IMG/VR virus record: IMGVR_UViG_3300017971_000001
Span: 181,277-245,276 of that record
Reading direction: 5' to 3' (one strand)
Length of the DNA: 64,000 nt
The notes below the pieces were generated by a model. It was not told the DNA's origin, did no database searches, and was given only the letters and a program-made list of their open reading frames with translations. A program made the translations under genes and the position numbers. Positions 1 through 64,000 of this stretch are shown here, piece by piece; the stretch's first letter is position 1, and each line of letters starts with the position of its first letter.

Positions 1-45
1 AAGTTCGACACGATCGAGGAAGCTGCAGCCCACGCGGTCTCTTCC

Positions 46-555
46 ATGTTCGGCCTGACGGCTTACGTCTCTGATCTGATCAAGGGCCAGGACGTCCAGG
101 AGCTCGAGGCCGAGCTCGGGTTCCTCAAGCACCGGCGTCTGGTCGGCAAGACCCGCGAGTCCCTTGGAGGCGCGACGGTCGAGGACGTCAAGGCGATCCG
201 CAAGGAAGAGGTCGAGGCGCTGCACGAAGGCGACGGGGTCGACGAGAACGTCCTCGTCGGGGCGGGCAGCAAGGACAGCGACATGGCCGCGGCCGACGAG
301 GAAGCCGCTGGGCTCCGACTCGACCACGACGGCGACGTGTTCGAGATCGGCGCGCAGATCAGCTACCGGCTGATCACGCCGTTGGGCAACACGATCGCGG
401 TCTCCGAACGGCCCTTTTCGATCGATCGAGTCGTCAGTTTCATGCGCTTCAACCACGTCTTGAAGAACGACCTGGCGCTGCTCCGCGAGCAGGAAAACCA
501 GGTCAGGAGCGCGGTCAACCAGACCTTTAGCTGGTCTACGAAGGCGGCTGCCTAG
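46..555 (+). CDS. Hypothetical protein
   Basis: 169 aa ORF with G/C-ending codons like neighbouring genes; no recognised motif. Confidence 0.55.
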   Translation: MFGLTAYVSDLIKGQDVQELEAELGFLKHRRLVGKTRESLGGATVEDVKAIRKEEVEALHEGDGVDENVLVGAGSKDSDMAAADEEAAGLRLDHDGDVFEIGAQISYRLITPLGNTIAVSERPFSIDRVVSFMRFNHVLKNDLALLREQENQVRSAVNQTFSWSTKAAA

Positions 556-904
556 CGGCGGGAAGCGGCCAGCGCGGACGATCGACGCGCTTGTCTGAGC
601 TACGGAAAACGGTGCTCACCCGCCCAAGATTGCCACGGCCGAGAGCGAGATCGGCCACCTGAGAGGCCCAAAAATTCGTCCGAAAATTTGATCCCGCGAG
701 CAAGCTCGGCGCAAAACGCGTTGAGCTCAAGGTATGTACTTTCACCTATGGAATAAATTACATAAGCCCATACCCGGACTCCATTTGACTCCGAGACTTT
801 TCGTATATAGACAAACAAAAACCACGGAGCCTGCCCGCCAGTTGTCCTACCCCCTTGATATCAATGCTTTTCGAACCAAAGAGCCCTCAACGGGGCCCGG
901 AAGA

Positions 905-1585
905 ATGAGCGGAAAGCACGCCATGACCTACGCCGCGCAGCGGATTGCCTGGATCGATTTCGAGACAACTGGACTGGTCGACGTGCCCGATCAGCCGGCC
1001 TGGCCGCTCGTTTTGGAGGTCGCTCTCGTCGTCACCTGCTCGCGCTTGAAGGTCCTCGACGCGCGCGAATTTGTGATCAAGACGCCTCCCGAAAAGCTGT
1101 TTGGGGAGTGCGACGGCAAGTCCTACCTGAACGATTTCACGCGGGAAATGCACACCAAGAACGGGCTGATCAGGGAACTCGAGGCGGGCGCCGGGAAAGG
1201 GATCGCGGAGGTCGACGTGATCCTCTACTCGATCCTGGCTGAGCACGAGGTCGAGATCGAAGTTGAGCGTGACGGGAAAACCGAGCTCAAGCCCTACAAG
1301 CCCGTCCTCGGCGGCGCCTCCCCGGGCGCGCTGGATCGGCCGATCCTCCGCAAGTATTTTCCGCTCACGAACAGCGCTCTCAGCCACCGAAGCCTGGACG
1401 TCAGCACGCTCAAGCTTGCCTTTCGCAACTGGTTCGACGGCCCTCTGGGCGAAGTCGATAGCAAGGACGAAGCTGAGCACCGGGCCATGGCGGACACGCT
1501 CGCGGCGATCCGGTTCGCCTCGATCTACCGGGACGCGATCGGCCGGATTCCGCTGCCGGAAAGCAGCAAAGTCGCTCCGGTGTGA
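905..1585 (+). CDS. orn: Oligoribonuclease-like DEDDh 3'-5' exonuclease
   Basis: Motifs WIDFETTGL, VLEVALVVT, MHTKNGL, LDVSTLK, HRAMADT match the Orn/DnaQ pattern; start is ATG 905 or 923, upstream ORF extension is AT-rich intergenic DNA. Confidence 0.88.
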   Translation: MSGKHAMTYAAQRIAWIDFETTGLVDVPDQPAWPLVLEVALVVTCSRLKVLDAREFVIKTPPEKLFGECDGKSYLNDFTREMHTKNGLIRELEAGAGKGIAEVDVILYSILAEHEVEIEVERDGKTELKPYKPVLGGASPGALDRPILRKYFPLTNSALSHRSLDVSTLKLAFRNWFDGPLGEVDSKDEAEHRAMADTLAAIRFASIYRDAIGRIPLPESSKVAPV

Positions 1586-61303: not shown

Positions 61304-62047
61304 GTGAGAGCATTCAATCTTCCATGTCCTCCGGACACGCCGCTGGGCCAAGAGATCCTCGCTCTCGCGCGCAGCGAGGATCCGCAAGACCGCGAGCGGT
61401 TGTTTCAACTGCTCGACGACGCGGGCGCCGAGATCGACGTGCCGGATCAAGGCGAGGTCGCGATCGGCGGCAGGTCGTGTGAATTCTCGTTCACGCACCA
61501 GGTCCTTGAGGTCGAGGGCGTTCTGGACGAAACCTTTTGCCGCGACGTGATCGAGCTCGCCGAATCCAAGGGCGTCTGGAGTGACAGCACGCAAGTCCGG
61601 GGCGGCGGTCCGGTCTACCAGGACGAAAATCGCACCAGCCAGTATCAGCGCTTGCGCGATATCTGCTTTCCTGACTACGCCGACCACTTGCAGCAAAGGC
61701 TGATCGAGGTCGCCAAGTTCTACCAGGCTCGCAACAAGTACCTTGTGTTCAAGGAGCAGGAGATCAGCTGGGAGCTCCTGCGCTACCAGCCCGGCGACAA
61801 GTTCGAGACGCACGTCGACATGATCGCCAACAGCAGCTGGAAGGCGCGGACGCTGACCTTGCTCGCCTACCTGAACGACGACTTCAGCGGAGGGGAGACG
61901 GAGTTCGTCAAGCCGGGCCCTGAGGTGACCGTCCAACCGAAGCGCGGGAAGGCGATCGCCAGCCCGCCGTTCTGGACACACCCGCACCGAGGCTGCCCGC
62001 CGACCAGCGGCAGTAAATACGTCGTCCTTGGGTGGCTGTACGCATGA
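61304..62047 (+). CDS. 2OG-Fe(II) oxygenase (prolyl 4-hydroxylase-like)
   Basis: RYQPGDKFETHVD, YLNDDFSGGETEF, THPHRG, GSKY. Confidence 0.88.
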   Translation: MRAFNLPCPPDTPLGQEILALARSEDPQDRERLFQLLDDAGAEIDVPDQGEVAIGGRSCEFSFTHQVLEVEGVLDETFCRDVIELAESKGVWSDSTQVRGGGPVYQDENRTSQYQRLRDICFPDYADHLQQRLIEVAKFYQARNKYLVFKEQEISWELLRYQPGDKFETHVDMIANSSWKARTLTLLAYLNDDFSGGETEFVKPGPEVTVQPKRGKAIASPPFWTHPHRGCPPTSGSKYVVLGWLYA

Positions 62048-63906
62048 GTTATTGGAAAGCCTGGCTCGCACGTCGCGGCGTGTTCAACGTTCCCGACTCA
62101 GCGCTTCCGCCGGAGCCGCCGCGCGAGACCGTGCGCAGCAACCCGGCTGAGGAGGGAAGGACTTGGTACCTCGACGAAATGGGGGCCATGCCGAAGCTCA
62201 AGAAGCAGGCCAAGGGTCGCGGACGCCGCTTCCGACTCGAACCTCCCGAGGACGCGGTCGAGGCGGTCTATCAGTTCTTGGTTGAAGAAGCTTCGATCCG
62301 CCTCGCTGCGATCAACCGGCACGTCGCTTCAGGCGGGAGCGCCTGCCGAAAGGTCCATGGCGGCTTCCCCCGCTCCCGTGGATTCAAGTGTGTTTCCTTT
62401 TCGGTGGCCTCTGAAGACCGCTGCGGCGGCCGCCCGACGATCGCGAGCATGGCGCACGAATTTGGGGTTAGCCACAAGCGCGCTCGCATGTTCGTCTGCC
62501 AAGCCCAGACGAAGATCGTCAAGGAGGGATACGAATTGCCCCTCGAGGTCCCCGACGTGAGCAAGTTCCGAGCGCTCATTGCCCGAGAGCTCCTGCTCCC
62601 CAAGTACGCTTACTACTTCGCGAGCGGTTCTGCGTCCCCGGGTGAAATCGCAGGTGCTGCTGAGCTCGGCGATCGAATCGGCGCGGGCGTCACGGTCAAC
62701 AAGTGCCGAGAGGGGACCCAGTGCTTCGCCGGCGTCATGGATTTGATTTGGCGCAAGGGGGTCAAGGTTTTCGTTGACTCGGGTGCCTTCGAGGAGGTCG
62801 CGGCCAAGGGCGGAAAGCTCAAGGTCGTCTCACCGATCGACGACGAAGCCTGGGCCGAACGACTCGAGACCTACCTGAAGATCGCGCGTGTCTTCGGCGG
62901 CCGCGCTCACGTCGTCGCTCCAGACCGAGTCGGAAGTCAGAGCGACACGCTGGAGCGCCTCAAGGCGTATCGCGATCAAATGGCCCCCGTAATCGCGAAG
63001 GGGGCCAAGATCTTGGTGCCCGTGCAGCGCGGAAGCAAGTCCGCCTCCGCGTTCTATAAGCAGGCCAAGAAGGCGCTCGGCACGAAGGAGCCGCAGTGCA
63101 TGCCGGCCTTCCCCATGAAGAAGGGCGCCTACTCTCTTGAGGAGCTCCTCTCGTTTGTCCGCAAGGAGAAACCTCACGAAGTCCACTTGCTCGGCCTTGG
63201 CCCCGGCGGCAGCGCGCAGGCCAAGAAGTCTGGAAACAAGAAGGTGGACGCCAGCGAGGTGCTTAGGCGAGTTCACGAGGTCTCTCCGAGGACCAAGATC
63301 TACATGGACTCGGTCCTGGTTCGCTCCGGCGCCGGCCGCGGCTTCCTGAGCTTGAGCCCGAACGTCTACACGCAAGCTCAGGACGTCGTCCGATTCGAGC
63401 TCATTGACGAGGCATTCCAGAAAAGCTGGTTCGGCGGCCAGTCCATGGAGAACTGGATCAAGTGGGTTCAGGGTGAAGGCGGTTACTGGGGCGACGAGCC
63501 TGTGATCGATTACACCAACTGGATCTTCGAGGGGATTGATATTTGGTTCCCACAGGACTTCCGCGAACTCATTCCGAAGGAACTCAAGTTCTTGGGATAC
63601 ACAGGACTGCCGCCGAAGTCCCTTGCGGTCGAAAGTCCCTACGACTACTTGAGCAAGGTCGCCGAGGACTACGACCTCTGGGCCGACCAGTCGTTCAGCT
63701 TCTGGCTGGATCGGCACTTCGCCGCGTTCTTGGGGAGCCTTTACGCTGTGAGGCGCAAGCGTGACGCGATCCCGCTTGCCTGGCAGCAGCGCGACCTCGA
63801 AACCTTTCTTGCTGAACTCCCTTCGCTCGAGTCGGCGATCCCTTACGTCATGTTCCAGGACGAGCACGGGGAATCCGGCCCCTTCGTTATGAGGTTTGAA
63901 TCATGA
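62044..63906 (+). CDS. TGT/DpdA-like (base-exchange fold) protein with N-terminal RSNP and HTH
   Basis: VFVDSGAF, VAPDRVG, LVPVQRG, EVHLLGLG, IYMDS; TIASMAHEFGVSHKRAR HTH; ATGA overlap. Confidence 0.68.
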   Translation: MSYWKAWLARRGVFNVPDSALPPEPPRETVRSNPAEEGRTWYLDEMGAMPKLKKQAKGRGRRFRLEPPEDAVEAVYQFLVEEASIRLAAINRHVASGGSACRKVHGGFPRSRGFKCVSFSVASEDRCGGRPTIASMAHEFGVSHKRARMFVCQAQTKIVKEGYELPLEVPDVSKFRALIARELLLPKYAYYFASGSASPGEIAGAAELGDRIGAGVTVNKCREGTQCFAGVMDLIWRKGVKVFVDSGAFEEVAAKGGKLKVVSPIDDEAWAERLETYLKIARVFGGRAHVVAPDRVGSQSDTLERLKAYRDQMAPVIAKGAKILVPVQRGSKSASAFYKQAKKALGTKEPQCMPAFPMKKGAYSLEELLSFVRKEKPHEVHLLGLGPGGSAQAKKSGNKKVDASEVLRRVHEVSPRTKIYMDSVLVRSGAGRGFLSLSPNVYTQAQDVVRFELIDEAFQKSWFGGQSMENWIKWVQGEGGYWGDEPVIDYTNWIFEGIDIWFPQDFRELIPKELKFLGYTGLPPKSLAVESPYDYLSKVAEDYDLWADQSFSFWLDRHFAAFLGSLYAVRRKRDAIPLAWQQRDLETFLAELPSLESAIPYVMFQDEHGESGPFVMRFES

Positions 63907-64000
63907 GCGGTCCTCCTGCAAATCCCTGGGACGCGATCGCGCGCATGGAGCGCGAGGAGCGCGCCCGCCGTCGCTCCAAGAAGAAGACGACGCGCAAGAA
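63903..64000 (+). CDS. Partial ORF running off the window
   Basis: ATGA overlap; Lys/Arg-rich start. Confidence 0.55.
   Translation, partial: MSGPPANPWDAIARMEREERARRRSKKKTTRK

What the first reader, a model, noticed from the sequence alone, without database searches (positions are those of the whole stretch)
1..64000. An unusually large (>64 kb) membrane-containing jelly-roll virus of bacteria
Seen: 64 kb of continuous viral-style genes with no tailed-phage hallmark (no terminase, portal or tail tube recognised), plus jelly-roll-like capsid genes, collagen fibres and about 12 tail-anchored membrane proteins. Known: characterised prokaryotic Varidnaviria (tectiviruses, corticoviruses, STIV, Halopanivirales) are mostly about 10-31 kb. 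Inference: a much larger lineage with accessory functions (tRNA-like RNAs, kinase, ART, DNA modification) more typical of jumbo phages.
Basis: partly seen in the sequence, partly recalled or inferred. Interest (0 to 1): 0.85.

Follow-up and report, generated by a model that had tools for sequence, protein, structure and literature searches.

The report
Giant jelly-roll-capsid virus of bacteria
The window is the virion-gene end of a complete, circular 245-kb virus genome with bacterial-style genes that encodes jelly-roll (PRD1/adenovirus-type) capsid proteins and no detectable tailed-phage parts; if it really builds such a capsid it is over five times larger than any characterised tailless phage.

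Summary
The window is the last 64 kb of a 245,276-bp IMG/VR contig whose ends overlap by 123 bp. Other assemblies recover the same genome, permuted, so it is circular, about 245,153 bp, and not chimeric. The paralogues at 49384 and 50830 fold as double jelly rolls. Their structural neighbours are the known DJR proteins: PHM, GH172/DUF2961, and the iridovirus, STIV and phiCjT23 capsid proteins. The best viral match is probably structural protein gp47 of the membrane phage SSIP-1. The 46857 protein is a highly conserved single jelly roll. Around them lie 10-12 tail-anchored membrane proteins, four very basic proteins and collagen-like fibres. I read 236 of the 245 kb. Pfam and PHROGs found no terminase, portal, HK97 capsid or tail tube, and only one marginal sheath hit. 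They also found no FtsK/A32 packaging ATPase and no DNA polymerase. Nine kb stayed unread; that stretch begins with a CRISPR array next to a Cas12m-like gene. Relatives sit on contigs up to 190 kb, two of them in 'Deltaproteobacteria' bins. Best reading (about 0.65): a new lineage of giant tailless jelly-roll phages.

The parts
46857..47495 (+). Single jelly-roll protein of 212 aa. It is the most conserved protein of the module. It is a candidate penton or small capsid protein.
   Evidence: AF2 model pLDDT 82, pTM 0.79, one 8-stranded sandwich. Foldseek PDB hits are weak but nearly all viral jelly-roll capsid proteins; SPV1 MCP 6oj0_A is top (E 0.02, prob 0.90). 83 homologues at 75-90% identity. 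89% identity to the 190-kb relative. GC3 0.88. The start at 46857 follows the Atlas record.
49384..50826 (+). Double jelly-roll protein A (480 aa), a capsid protein candidate.
   Evidence: 40% identity to 50830 over 332 aa, E 3e-81. Falls in its own clade (97/92 support) of a family-wide ancient duplication. 54% identity to the relative. GC3 0.85.
50830..52326 (+). Double jelly-roll protein B (498 aa), a capsid protein candidate. The core is residues ~20-340, followed by a Pro/Gly-rich C-terminal extension.
   Evidence: AF2 model with core pLDDT ~90. Foldseek PDB hits: PHM 5.8e-5, GH172 8ah3/8ic8/7v1v, SGIV MCP 8hif 2.4e-4, STIV 3j31 6.8e-4, phiCjT23 7zzz 2e-3. BFVD top hit I1ZBI0: E 4.9e-9, TM 0.69. 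Atlas neighbours: GH172 TM 0.53, PM2 P2 by features.
52326..53996 (+). Three conserved small beta-rich proteins (263, 124 and 150 aa). They are candidate minor capsid or vertex proteins.
   Evidence: Syntenic and conserved in the 190-kb relative at 42%, 33% and 66% identity. No Pfam or PHROG hit. The Atlas lead to the P23-77 VP17 barrel scores only 0.74.
54025..55463 (+). Two collagen-like (Gly-X-Y) fibre proteins with globular C-terminal domains.
   Evidence: PHROG collagen-type 'tail fiber' families, E 1e-6 to 1e-12, matching only the Gly-X-Y part. 20% Gly.
55536..60509 (+). More virion-module proteins, including an 858-aa Gly/Thr/Ala-rich fibre-like protein (57933-60509).
   Evidence: 55536 and 55989 are conserved in the relative. 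There are no family hits. Composition. The function is inferred.
32200..39531 (+). Cluster of 10-12 proteins, each with a single C-terminal transmembrane anchor. They are candidates for an internal virion membrane.
   Evidence: Hydropathy scan: 10 strict C-tail anchors plus 2 weaker. They lie in the same + strand operon-like run as the capsid genes.
41048..46641 (+). Four extremely basic proteins (net charge +36, +62, +32, +116). The last also has a hydrophobic segment. They are candidate DNA-condensing core proteins.
   Evidence: Composition. Partly conserved in the relative at 49% and 33% identity. No family hits. The function is inferred.
27309..32176 (+). Start of the + strand module. It holds an 899-aa acidic, coiled-coil, low-complexity protein, two coiled-coil proteins and a weak transglutaminase-like (cysteine protease fold) protein at 31400-32176.
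   Evidence: Translations. Transglut_core E 2.7e-4, just under Pfam's cut-off. No PHROG hit for the 899-aa protein.
47571..49205 (+). LAGLIDADG endonuclease domain fused to a Mom-like DNA-modification domain. It lies between the single and double jelly-roll genes and is conserved there in relatives.
   Evidence: LAGLIDADG_3 8e-19 and Mom 4e-8. phrog_1384 1e-11. Same architecture and position in L002 and L003. 54% identity.
61304..62047 (+). 2OG-Fe(II) oxygenase.
   Evidence: PF13640 E 2.9e-15.
8900..26583 (-). Minus-strand block of about 20 genes, nearly all without any family hit. It includes a multi-HTH protein (18756-19955).
   Evidence: GC3 gene calls. Pfam and PHROGs. PDB phmmer found nothing.
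4338..4412 (+). tRNA-Leu (anticodon AAG), the only RNA gene found in the window.
   Evidence: ARAGORN. Rfam RF00005, 55 bits.
1..555 (+). C-terminal end of a 1100-aa protein that starts upstream of the window. It has a weak primase-like hit.
   Evidence: Gene call in L005. phrog_6444 'DNA primase' E 4e-4.

Best explanation
The window is the morphogenesis end of a complete, circular genome of about 245 kb. The genome belongs to a virus of a bacterium, possibly a high-GC 'deltaproteobacterium' in the old sense (Myxococcota or Desulfobacterota).

I propose that the virion is tailless and icosahedral, of the PRD1-adenovirus (Varidnaviria-like) type. The proposed parts are:
- a shell built from two anciently duplicated double jelly-roll proteins (49384, 50830);
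- a highly conserved single jelly-roll protein (46857);
- an internal lipid vesicle studded with the 10-12 tail-anchored proteins (32.2-39.5 kb);
- DNA condensed by the four very basic proteins (41.0-46.6 kb);
- collagen-like fibres and other fibres (54-60.5 kb, and just past the window end) for host attachment.

What is shown:
- the folds;
- the conservation and synteny of the module;
- genome size and circularity;
- the absence of recognisable tailed-phage genes in 96% of the genome;
- prokaryotic translation signals.

What is inferred:
- that the jelly-roll proteins form the capsid, and which of them is the major one and which the vertex protein;
- the membrane;
- DNA condensation by the basic proteins;
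- the host;
- a capsid of about 170-180 nm with T near 150. This comes from scaling PRD1, SSIP-1 and PBCV-1 values tabulated in PMC6260650.

How the DNA is packaged is open, because no packaging ATPase of any kind was recognised.
For: Genome:
- The window is contig positions 181,277-245,276 of IMGVR_UViG_3300017971_000001.
- The first 123 nt equal the last 123 nt. Logan and ENA assemblies bridge the junction with 0 mismatches.
- The ENA 245,035-bp copy is permuted.
- Six assembly blocks of 0.2-1 Mb carry the genome.

Folds:
- The DJR model and its neighbours. These are exactly the DJR-fold families defined in PMC8812541.
- No histidine is among the >=90% conserved columns, which argues against a PHM-type copper enzyme.
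- The single jelly-roll model.

Link to SSIP-1:
- The top BFVD hit is 256 aa long.
- SSIP-1's only 256-aa protein is structural protein gp47.
- gp47 is also the single best hhalign hit among all 57 SSIP-1 proteins (E 0.0013, 97 columns).

Context:
- SJR, DJR-A, DJR-B and the small proteins are syntenic in relatives.
- Both DJR clades are retained across the family.
- These genes have the highest GC3 values in the window.
- The membrane-anchor cluster and basic proteins lie in the same strand run.

Negative evidence for tails:
- No terminase, portal, HK97 or tail tube, and only one marginal sheath hit, in 236 kb. This rests on precomputed Pfam hits, my Pfam scans and PHROGs.

Prokaryotic host:
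- SD-like motifs precede 21 of 33 ATG starts, against a 16% background.
- Genes overlap by 4 bp.
- Gene content includes RusA, Erf-like, Mom-like, a bacterial L7/L12 domain, and Cas12m with a CRISPR array.
- Relatives are binned as 'Deltaproteobacteria bacterium'.

Lineage size:
- Relatives lie on contigs of 190, 127, 102, 99 and 90 kb.
Against: - No FtsK/HerA (A32-like) packaging ATPase was found. Most Varidnaviria share this gene. The only canonical Walker A in 236 kb is in UvrD.
- 9.0 kb (contig 104,472-113,487) were never read.
- Pfam and PHROGs also miss a DNA polymerase here. Profile silence in this very dark proteome is therefore weaker evidence than usual.
- Only two proteins could be modelled, so an HK97 fold among the roughly 50 large dark proteins is not excluded structurally.
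- Foldseek E-values to real capsid proteins are modest (2e-4 to 2e-3). The cellular DJR enzymes score slightly better.
- The single jelly-roll hits are all above E 0.01.
- Neither profile (A1, A5) matches any solved structure by sequence.
- The single jelly-roll protein is far more conserved than the DJR pair. That is unexpected if the DJR proteins are the major shell proteins.
- Atlas neighbours are labelled 'Uroviricota'. These are automatic labels, and the phylum is known for only about 20% of members.
Confidence: 0.65

Rival explanations
1. It is a tailed jumbo phage (Caudoviricetes). Its HK97 capsid, portal and terminase are too divergent for Pfam and PHROGs, or lie in the unread 9 kb. 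The jelly-roll proteins would then be accessory virion parts, such as receptor-binding, carbohydrate-binding or decoration proteins.
For: - Genome size and accessory content resemble huge phages: a CRISPR-Cas12m system, tRNAs, inteins, chaperonin Cpn10, an L7/L12 domain and SOD.
- Several families are shared with actinophages: GP88 and L5 gp82.
- There are collagen-like 'tail fiber' PHROG hits.
- One marginal 'tail sheath' hit, E 0.0033.
- Atlas neighbours are labelled Uroviricota.
- Even the DNA polymerase is invisible to profiles, which shows how dark this proteome is.
Against: - The terminase large subunit is the most reliably detectable phage protein. It is absent from 96% of the genome.
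- No protein other than UvrD has a plausible P-loop.
- The unread stretch begins with a CRISPR array. Assemblies from two other samples break at about contig 106.2 kb and 113.7 kb. This suggests that most of the stretch is a variable array, which is an inference.
- The sheath hit is not backed by a PDB search.
- The collagen hits are compositional.
- The jelly-roll trio is the most conserved and most codon-biased part of the structural operon.
Confidence: 0.17
2. It is not a virus. It would be a large circular extrachromosomal element (a megaplasmid or Borg-like element). Its jelly-roll proteins would serve a cellular role, such as carbohydrate enzymes or binders like GH172/DUF2961, or a surface structure.
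For: - The best PDB matches are the cellular DJR families PHM and GH172.
- There is no packaging ATPase and no polymerase.
- Relatives are binned within bacterial MAGs.
- Glycosyltransferase, patatin and methyltransferase genes lie nearby.
Against: - No plasmid replication, partition or conjugation family was seen anywhere in the walk.
- More than 80% of genes are tiny ORFans in long co-directional runs, which is typical of viruses.
- The single jelly roll's neighbours are nearly all viral capsid proteins.
- The best viral match is a virion protein.
- The copper-site histidines of PHM are not conserved.
- The DJR proteins have no signal peptide, and carbohydrate-utilisation genes are absent around them.
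Confidence: 0.1
3. It is a virus of a eukaryote, a divergent giant-virus (Nucleocytoviricota-like) or polinton-derived lineage. DJR capsids and genomes above 200 kb are normal there.
For: - Genome size and GC are in the range of some giant viruses.
- There are Foldseek hits to iridovirus and Megaviridae capsid proteins and to Terrestrivirus and Hyperionvirus proteins.
- The tRNA-Leu anticodon AAG is commoner in eukaryotes. This rests on my own knowledge.
- PTH2 is an archaeal/eukaryotic-type enzyme.
Against: - Shine-Dalgarno-like motifs and 4-bp ATGA gene overlaps.
- No family B polymerase, A32, D5, VLTF3 or RNA polymerase family was found.
- Phage-type genes are present: RusA, Erf, Mom, and Cas12m with a CRISPR array.
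- Relatives are binned with bacteria.
Confidence: 0.03

Closest known systems
[quoted passage not shown]
   Same: - Circular dsDNA, tailless, membrane-containing phage with more than one capsid protein type (PMC6356626, PMC6260650).
- Its structural protein gp47 (256 aa) is the best profile match to the DJR family among all SSIP-1 proteins.
- gp47 has the length of the top BFVD structural hit.
- In SSIP-1 a 211-aa structural protein gene lies directly upstream of gp47, as the 212-aa jelly roll does here.
- Its proteome is almost entirely orphan.
   Different: - SSIP-1 is 43.8 kb (T=49, about 100 nm). This genome is 245 kb.
- Sequence similarity is marginal (hhalign prob 18%).
- No other protein matches, apart from one short 15-bit phmmer hit to gp20.
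- There are two 480-500-aa paralogues here, against one 256-aa protein in SSIP-1.
- That I1ZBI0 is gp47 rests on length and my recollection of the accession block. It is not proven.
Prokaryotic Bamfordvirae (Tectiviridae PRD1, Corticoviridae PM2, Turriviridae STIV, FLiP/phiCjT23)
   Same: - DJR-fold capsid-type protein plus a single jelly-roll protein.
- A cluster of small membrane proteins in the structural operon.
- Fibres or spikes.
- Foldseek hits to STIV and phiCjT23 capsid proteins.
- Atlas feature neighbours are PM2 P2 and PRD1 P3.
   Different: - Genomes of those viruses are stated as under 20 kbp (PMC8812541). This one is more than 12 times larger.
- No FtsK/HerA ATPase was found.
- Two DJR paralogues are retained.
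- No sequence-profile match to any of their families.
Helvetiavirae (P23-77, SH1, HHIV-2: two vertical single-barrel capsid proteins)
   Same: - More than one capsid-type jelly-roll protein is encoded side by side.
- A small (about 200 aa) conserved barrel protein sits next to larger two-barrel protein(s).
- SSIP-1 has been grouped with them (PMC4958249, PMC5332951).
- There is a weak Atlas lead from 52311 to the VP17 barrel.
   Different: - The two barrels here match side-by-side DJR proteins (GH172, PHM, DJR capsid proteins), not a stacked VP17 arrangement, as far as Foldseek shows.
- Their genomes are 16-30 kb.
- Their packaging ATPase is recognisable, and none is found here.
Huge/jumbo phages (Caudoviricetes over 200 kb) and small giant viruses such as PBCV-1
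   Same: - Genome size.
- Virus-encoded CRISPR-Cas, tRNAs, inteins, and translation- and chaperone-related genes.
- PBCV-1 shows that a DJR shell with an inner membrane can hold 330 kb (PMC6260650).
   Different: - No HK97, portal, terminase or tail genes, unlike jumbo phages.
- Prokaryotic signals and no giant-virus core genes, unlike PBCV-1.

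Membership tests
Varidnaviria / Bamfordvirae (DJR-capsid viruses) | Major capsid protein with a double jelly-roll fold | tested here: met
   AF2 model of 50830 (core pLDDT ~90). Foldseek matches the DJR-fold set of PHM, GH172 and the SGIV, STIV and phiCjT23 capsid proteins. BFVD top hit TM 0.69. This is at fold level only: vertical orientation in a shell and trimer formation were not tested.
Varidnaviria / Bamfordvirae (DJR-capsid viruses) | FtsK/HerA-superfamily (A32-like) genome-packaging ATPase | tested here: not met
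   No such Pfam or PHROG family in 236 of 245 kb. The only canonical Walker A is in UvrD. 9 kb unread. Some DJR viruses (FLiP-like) also lack it (PMC8812541).
Varidnaviria / Bamfordvirae (DJR-capsid viruses) | Single jelly-roll penton/vertex protein encoded near the capsid gene | tested here: inconclusive
   46857-47495 is a single jelly roll whose structural neighbours are capsid proteins, but every E-value is 0.02 or higher. Its very high conservation fits a major protein as well as a penton.
Varidnaviria / Bamfordvirae (DJR-capsid viruses) | Sequence-profile membership in a known capsid family (PRD1 P3, PM2 P2, STIV B345, Capsid_NCLDV and others) | tested here: not met
   No Pfam or PHROG hit. 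No PDB profile hit for A1 or A5. No tblastn hit in 50,697 phage records at E<=1.
Membrane-containing tailless phages | Internal lipid membrane in the virion | not testable with these tools
   Indirect only: 10-12 tail-anchored proteins in the structural gene run. Testing needs particles, for example chloroform sensitivity, lipid analysis or cryo-EM.
Caudoviricetes (tailed phages) | Terminase large subunit | tested here: not met
   No terminase family by Pfam or PHROGs in 236 kb, and no P-loop candidate (calls as above; 75, 96). 9 kb unread.
Caudoviricetes (tailed phages) | Portal protein and HK97-fold major capsid protein | tested here: not met
   No profile hit in any protein of 200 aa or more. 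Fold-level screening of all dark proteins was not possible, because only 2 structure jobs were allowed.
Caudoviricetes (tailed phages) | Tail tube/sheath/tape measure/baseplate | tested here: not met
   Only collagen-repeat 'tail fiber' matches and one marginal sheath hit at E 0.0033, which has no PDB support.
Nucleocytoviricota | Core genes (family B polymerase, A32 ATPase, D5 primase-helicase, VLTF3, RNA polymerase) | tested here: not met
   None among the Pfam hits along the genome. SD-like motifs precede 64% of starts.
SSIP-1-like phages | Homology of capsid proteins to SSIP-1 structural proteins | tested here: inconclusive
   gp47 is the best of 57 proteins by hhalign (E 0.0013, prob 18%), and its length matches the top Foldseek hit. 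A5 has no SSIP-1 match.

The most novel reading that the evidence does not exclude
This would be the first 'giant' jelly-roll phage lineage. Its features would be:
- a class- or order-level group of bacterial viruses with circular genomes of 100-245 kb;
- a capsid of about 170-180 nm built from two DJR paralogues plus a single jelly-roll protein around an internal membrane;
- a protein-condensed DNA core;
- no FtsK/A32-type motor, which would imply a different way of filling a jelly-roll capsid;
- its own Cas12m CRISPR system.

It would show that large genome size evolved in the PRD1-adenovirus lineage in bacteria, independently of eukaryotic giant viruses.
Probability: 0.5. Interest if true: 0.92.

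Novelty: new variant of a known kind. Interest (0 to 1): 0.8.

Why it matters
Characterised prokaryotic viruses with jelly-roll capsids are small. One review puts DJR-MCP viruses of prokaryotes at 'less than 20 kbp' (PMC8812541). The largest tailless membrane phage I found tabulated is SSIP-1 at 44 kbp (PMC6260650). Very large genomes in this structural lineage are known only from eukaryotic giant viruses, and all known huge phages are tailed.

A 245-kb circular bacterial virus with a jelly-roll capsid module would break that pattern. It would supply a prokaryotic test case for how jelly-roll shells scale up: paralogous capsid proteins, possible tape-measure or scaffold proteins, and basic core proteins. 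It would also raise the question of how such a capsid is filled without a recognisable packaging ATPase.

Three literature searches found no description of such a lineage. The family is not a one-off. The profile search found 218 protein clusters, and relatives lie on contigs of 90-190 kb.

Tried and rejected
- Megablast of 44-60 kb and tblastn of the DJR protein against 50,697 phage records: no match.
- One look-up of encoding contigs failed because I guessed the wrong start codon.
- I searched for a dispersed repeat of 14 nt or more that could pull many loci from the contig in one scan. Only a local 15-nt tandem repeat exists.
- A batch PHROG scan of 56 non-window proteins was swamped by two collagen-like paralogues and told me little. 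I replaced it with direct scans.
- A genome-contig scan anchored at the gap edge, meant to fetch the missing 9 kb, found nothing.
- Alignment A1 was too divergent for locus scanning. I used A4 instead and found only the already known MAG contig.
- PDB sequence searches of four large dark window proteins, of the 414-aa 'sheath' candidate and of profiles A1 and A5: nothing.
- The SSIP-1 paper itself (PMC3344969) is not held, so I could not confirm which SSIP-1 gene products are the major capsid proteins.
- Naming or context for the shorter (290-420 aa) relatives: no names, and contigs of 63 kb or less.
- Rfam and repeat search of a 2.7-kb gene-free stretch: nothing decisive.
- I rejected a PHM-like enzyme reading, because no histidine is conserved.
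- I rejected a chimeric assembly, because loci from five sources tile with 0-1 mismatch.

Full report
WHERE THE WINDOW COMES FROM

A scan of the viral contig collection with the 50830 protein returned one locus, on IMGVR_UViG_3300017971_000001, which is 245,276 bp long. A second scan with the first window ORF fixed window position 1 at contig position 181,277. The window is therefore the last 64 kb of that contig.

I then walked the contig with exact-protein look-ups and locus scans. I tiled the pieces into contig coordinates. Loci from JGI, ENA, Logan and IMG/VR agree with 0-1 mismatch.

- The first 123 nt of the contig equal its last 123 nt. Independent assemblies run straight across that junction.
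- An ENA assembly of 245,035 bp carries the same genome in a different permutation.
- The molecule is therefore circular, or circularly permuted, with about 245,153 unique bp. It is complete and not a chimera.

THE OBSERVATION

Composition is even across the window (GC 0.60-0.68). GC3-based gene calling gives a + strand block at 1-8.7 kb, a - strand block at 8.9-26.6 kb and a long + strand block at 26.8-64 kb.

Pfam and PHROGs are almost silent. The window hits are:
- a LAGLIDADG plus Mom-like protein;
- two collagen-like proteins;
- a multi-HTH protein;
- a weak transglutaminase-like protein;
- a 2OG-Fe(II) oxygenase;
- in a batch of 46 further proteins, only PTH2, RNase_T, DSPc and a weak HIPIP.

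No terminase, portal, HK97 capsid or tail family appears.

A hydropathy scan finds ten proteins with a single C-terminal anchor between 32.2 and 39.5 kb, plus two weaker cases. It also finds four consecutive proteins with net charges of +36 to +116.

Only one RNA gene is present, tRNA-Leu(AAG). I found no kinase or ADP-ribosyltransferase family.

THE CAPSID CANDIDATES

The 49384 and 50830 proteins are paralogues (40% identity, E 3e-81). Forty homologues, all unnamed, lie on contigs up to 190 kb.

With that alignment AlphaFold2 gives a confident core (residues ~20-340, pLDDT about 90). The core is two successive eight-stranded sandwiches joined by a helix.

Foldseek against the PDB returns these hits:
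- peptidylglycine hydroxylating monooxygenase (PHM);
- GH172/DUF2961 enzymes;
- the capsid proteins of Singapore grouper iridovirus, STIV and phiCjT23.

These are the families that Krupovic and colleagues define as the double jelly-roll fold: DJR-MCP, DUF2961, PNGase F and PHM (PMC8812541). No histidine is among the conserved columns of the family, so a PHM-type copper site is unlikely.

The best match in the viral model library is an unnamed 256-aa protein, I1ZBI0 (E 4.9e-9, TM 0.69).

- The SSIP-1 record has exactly one 256-aa protein, gp47, annotated as a structural protein.
- Among all 57 SSIP-1 proteins, gp47 is the only one with an extended hhalign match to the family profile (E 0.0013, 97 columns, prob 18%).
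- The two lines of evidence agree, but the identity of I1ZBI0 is not proven.

A tree of the family shows two well-supported clades (97/92), each holding one of the window's paralogues. Relatives carry both. The duplication is therefore old and has been retained.

The 46857-47495 protein (212 aa) has 83 homologues, most at 75-90% identity. It models as one jelly roll (pLDDT 82). Its Foldseek hits are individually weak (best E 0.02). Almost all are viral capsid jelly rolls: SPV1, circovirus, panicum mosaic virus, faustovirus, picornaviruses, D13 and PBCV-1.

The 52326 protein remains unresolved.

Compared with the 190-kb relative, identities are:
- the single jelly roll, 89%;
- DJR-A, 54%;
- DJR-B, 43%;
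- the 268-, 124- and 150-aa proteins that follow, 42%, 33% and 66%.

These genes also have the highest GC3 in the window (0.83-0.88), as expected for abundant virion proteins.

THE REST OF THE GENOME

Along 172 kb outside the window the recognisable genes are replication, recombination and accessory functions:
- a PD-(D/E)XK nuclease, RusA and an Erf-like protein;
- UvrD and SNF2 helicases, each interrupted by an intein;
- two DNA methylases;
- an exonuclease;
- Fe-SOD and Cpn10;
- an L7/L12 domain protein;
- NT5C, MazG-like and kinase-like domains;
- a glycosyltransferase and a patatin;
- actinophage-type GP88 and L5-gp82 families.

Contig positions 56-104 kb are a block of about a hundred very small genes.

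No terminase, portal, HK97 capsid, tail tube or baseplate family was found. One 'tail sheath' hit at E 0.0033 has no support from a PDB search.

Equally, no FtsK/HerA or A32-type ATPase and no DNA polymerase were found. A regex screen of all ORFs found only one credible Walker A, in UvrD.

THE UNREAD 9 KB

At its upper edge lies a 707-aa protein that matches the solved Cas12m structure sequence at E 3.5e-43. A CRISPR array of at least seven 36-nt repeats follows it and runs into the gap. Assemblies from two other samples end at about contig 106.2 kb and 113.7 kb, and the ENA assembly breaks inside the array. I infer that much of the unread stretch is a variable array. This lowers, but does not remove, the chance that a packaging gene hides there.

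HOST

Shine-Dalgarno-like motifs precede 21 of 33 ATG starts, against a 16% background. Genes often overlap by ATGA. The accessory genes are of bacterial and phage type. The only GTDB genome with a relative is a 'Deltaproteobacteria bacterium' MAG. A second relative carries the same label in NCBI. Binning of viral contigs is weak evidence, so the host phylum is tentative.

INTERPRETATION

The simplest account is a tailless icosahedral virus of the PRD1-adenovirus structural lineage with an internal membrane, scaled up to a 245-kb genome.

Capsid diameters and T numbers are tabulated in PMC6260650: PRD1 70 nm and T=25, SSIP-1 100 nm and T=49, PBCV-1 190 nm and T=169. Diameter scales as about 14 nm times the square root of T, and genome length scales with the cube of the diameter. 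On that basis 245 kb predicts roughly 170-180 nm and T near 150. This is my inference.

The 899-aa coiled-coil protein, the basic proteins and the anchor cluster fit roles as scaffold or tape measure, DNA condenser and membrane proteins. None of these roles is shown.

I cannot decide which jelly-roll protein is the major shell component. The single jelly roll is the most conserved. A Helvetiavirae-like arrangement, with a small barrel protein plus larger two-barrel proteins, is therefore as open as a Bamfordvirae-like one with DJR trimers plus a penton. SSIP-1 itself has been grouped with the two-capsid-protein viruses (PMC4958249, PMC5332951).

The missing ATPase is the main gap in membership. 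The family works like a jelly-roll virus on present evidence, but I do not file it as a member of any existing family.

RIVALS

- A tailed jumbo phage with undetectable hallmark genes (about 0.17).
- A non-viral extrachromosomal element (about 0.10).
- A eukaryotic virus (about 0.03).

Each is set out with its evidence in the Rival explanations section.

NOVELTY

Three literature searches found no description of a prokaryotic jelly-roll virus above about 44 kb. PMC8812541 states that prokaryotic DJR-MCP viruses have genomes under 20 kbp. The exhaustive profile search finds 218 clusters at E<=1e-3, of which 38 are at E<=1e-30, and none is named. This is therefore an uncharacterised but real family. 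Several members lie on contigs of 90-190 kb.

Noticed in passing
Outside the window: L023:17639-20222 (contig 113,488-116,071): A 707-aa Cas12m-like gene (PDB 23vw_A, E 3.5e-43) is followed directly by a CRISPR array of at least 7 copies of a 36-nt repeat (spacing 66-79 nt). The array runs into the unread 9 kb. This is a virus-encoded type V CRISPR system. Several assemblies break at this place.
   Followed up: partly
window:24600-25000 and window:63981-64000: A 15-nt tandem repeat that encodes a Lys/Thr/Arg-rich repeat in an ORF at about 24.5-25.0 kb. One 20-nt copy also sits at the very end of the window, which is the contig end.
   Followed up: partly
Outside the window: L005:5583-8987 and L007:17043 onwards; window:47571-49205: The UvrD and SNF2 helicases are each interrupted by a LAGLIDADG intein. 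The SNF2 P-loop is not found by regex, so the intein may sit in it. The window's LAGLIDADG-Mom fusion is conserved in relatives between the capsid genes.
   Followed up: partly
window:4338-4412: The tRNA-Leu has anticodon AAG. To my knowledge an A34 Leu anticodon is unusual for bacteria. A tRNA-Met (CAT) lies elsewhere in the genome (L012:12509-12598).
   Followed up: no
Whole genome (236 kb read): No DNA polymerase family is recognisable by Pfam or PHROGs, although the genome is 245 kb. Several dark proteins of 470-1100 aa lie in the replication region (L019, L022, L005). One has a weak primase hit.
   Followed up: partly
Outside the window: L009:3204-8164 (contig 1,265-6,225): Two large collagen-like paralogues (737 and 911 aa, 47% identical) lie just past the window end. 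They give very strong collagen-type PHROG hits (E down to 1e-125).
   Followed up: partly
Outside the window: contig ~56-104 kb (L014-L018): A block of about 100 very small genes (mostly 40-200 aa) with almost no family hits. It includes a Ribosomal_L12 domain protein, NT5C and cpYpsA. Cpn10 and Fe-SOD lie elsewhere in the genome.
   Followed up: no
Outside the window: L013:15541-18233: A 2.7-kb stretch with no called gene. It contains a perfect 50-nt tandem duplication (15791-15890). There is no Rfam match at E<=0.01.
   Followed up: partly
Outside the window: L012:10001-11641 (contig ~35.1-36.8 kb): A 546-aa dark protein whose homologues in the 190-kb relative occur as at least two adjacent copies (509 and 512 aa; a partly read 493-aa gene follows) directly downstream of the capsid module. 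In this genome it sits far from the module.
   Followed up: no
window:49384-52326: The DJR family keeps five near-invariant cysteines, at residues 138, 141, 287, 321 and 329 of the 50830 protein. These could be disulfides or a metal site, which is unusual for capsid proteins.
   Followed up: no
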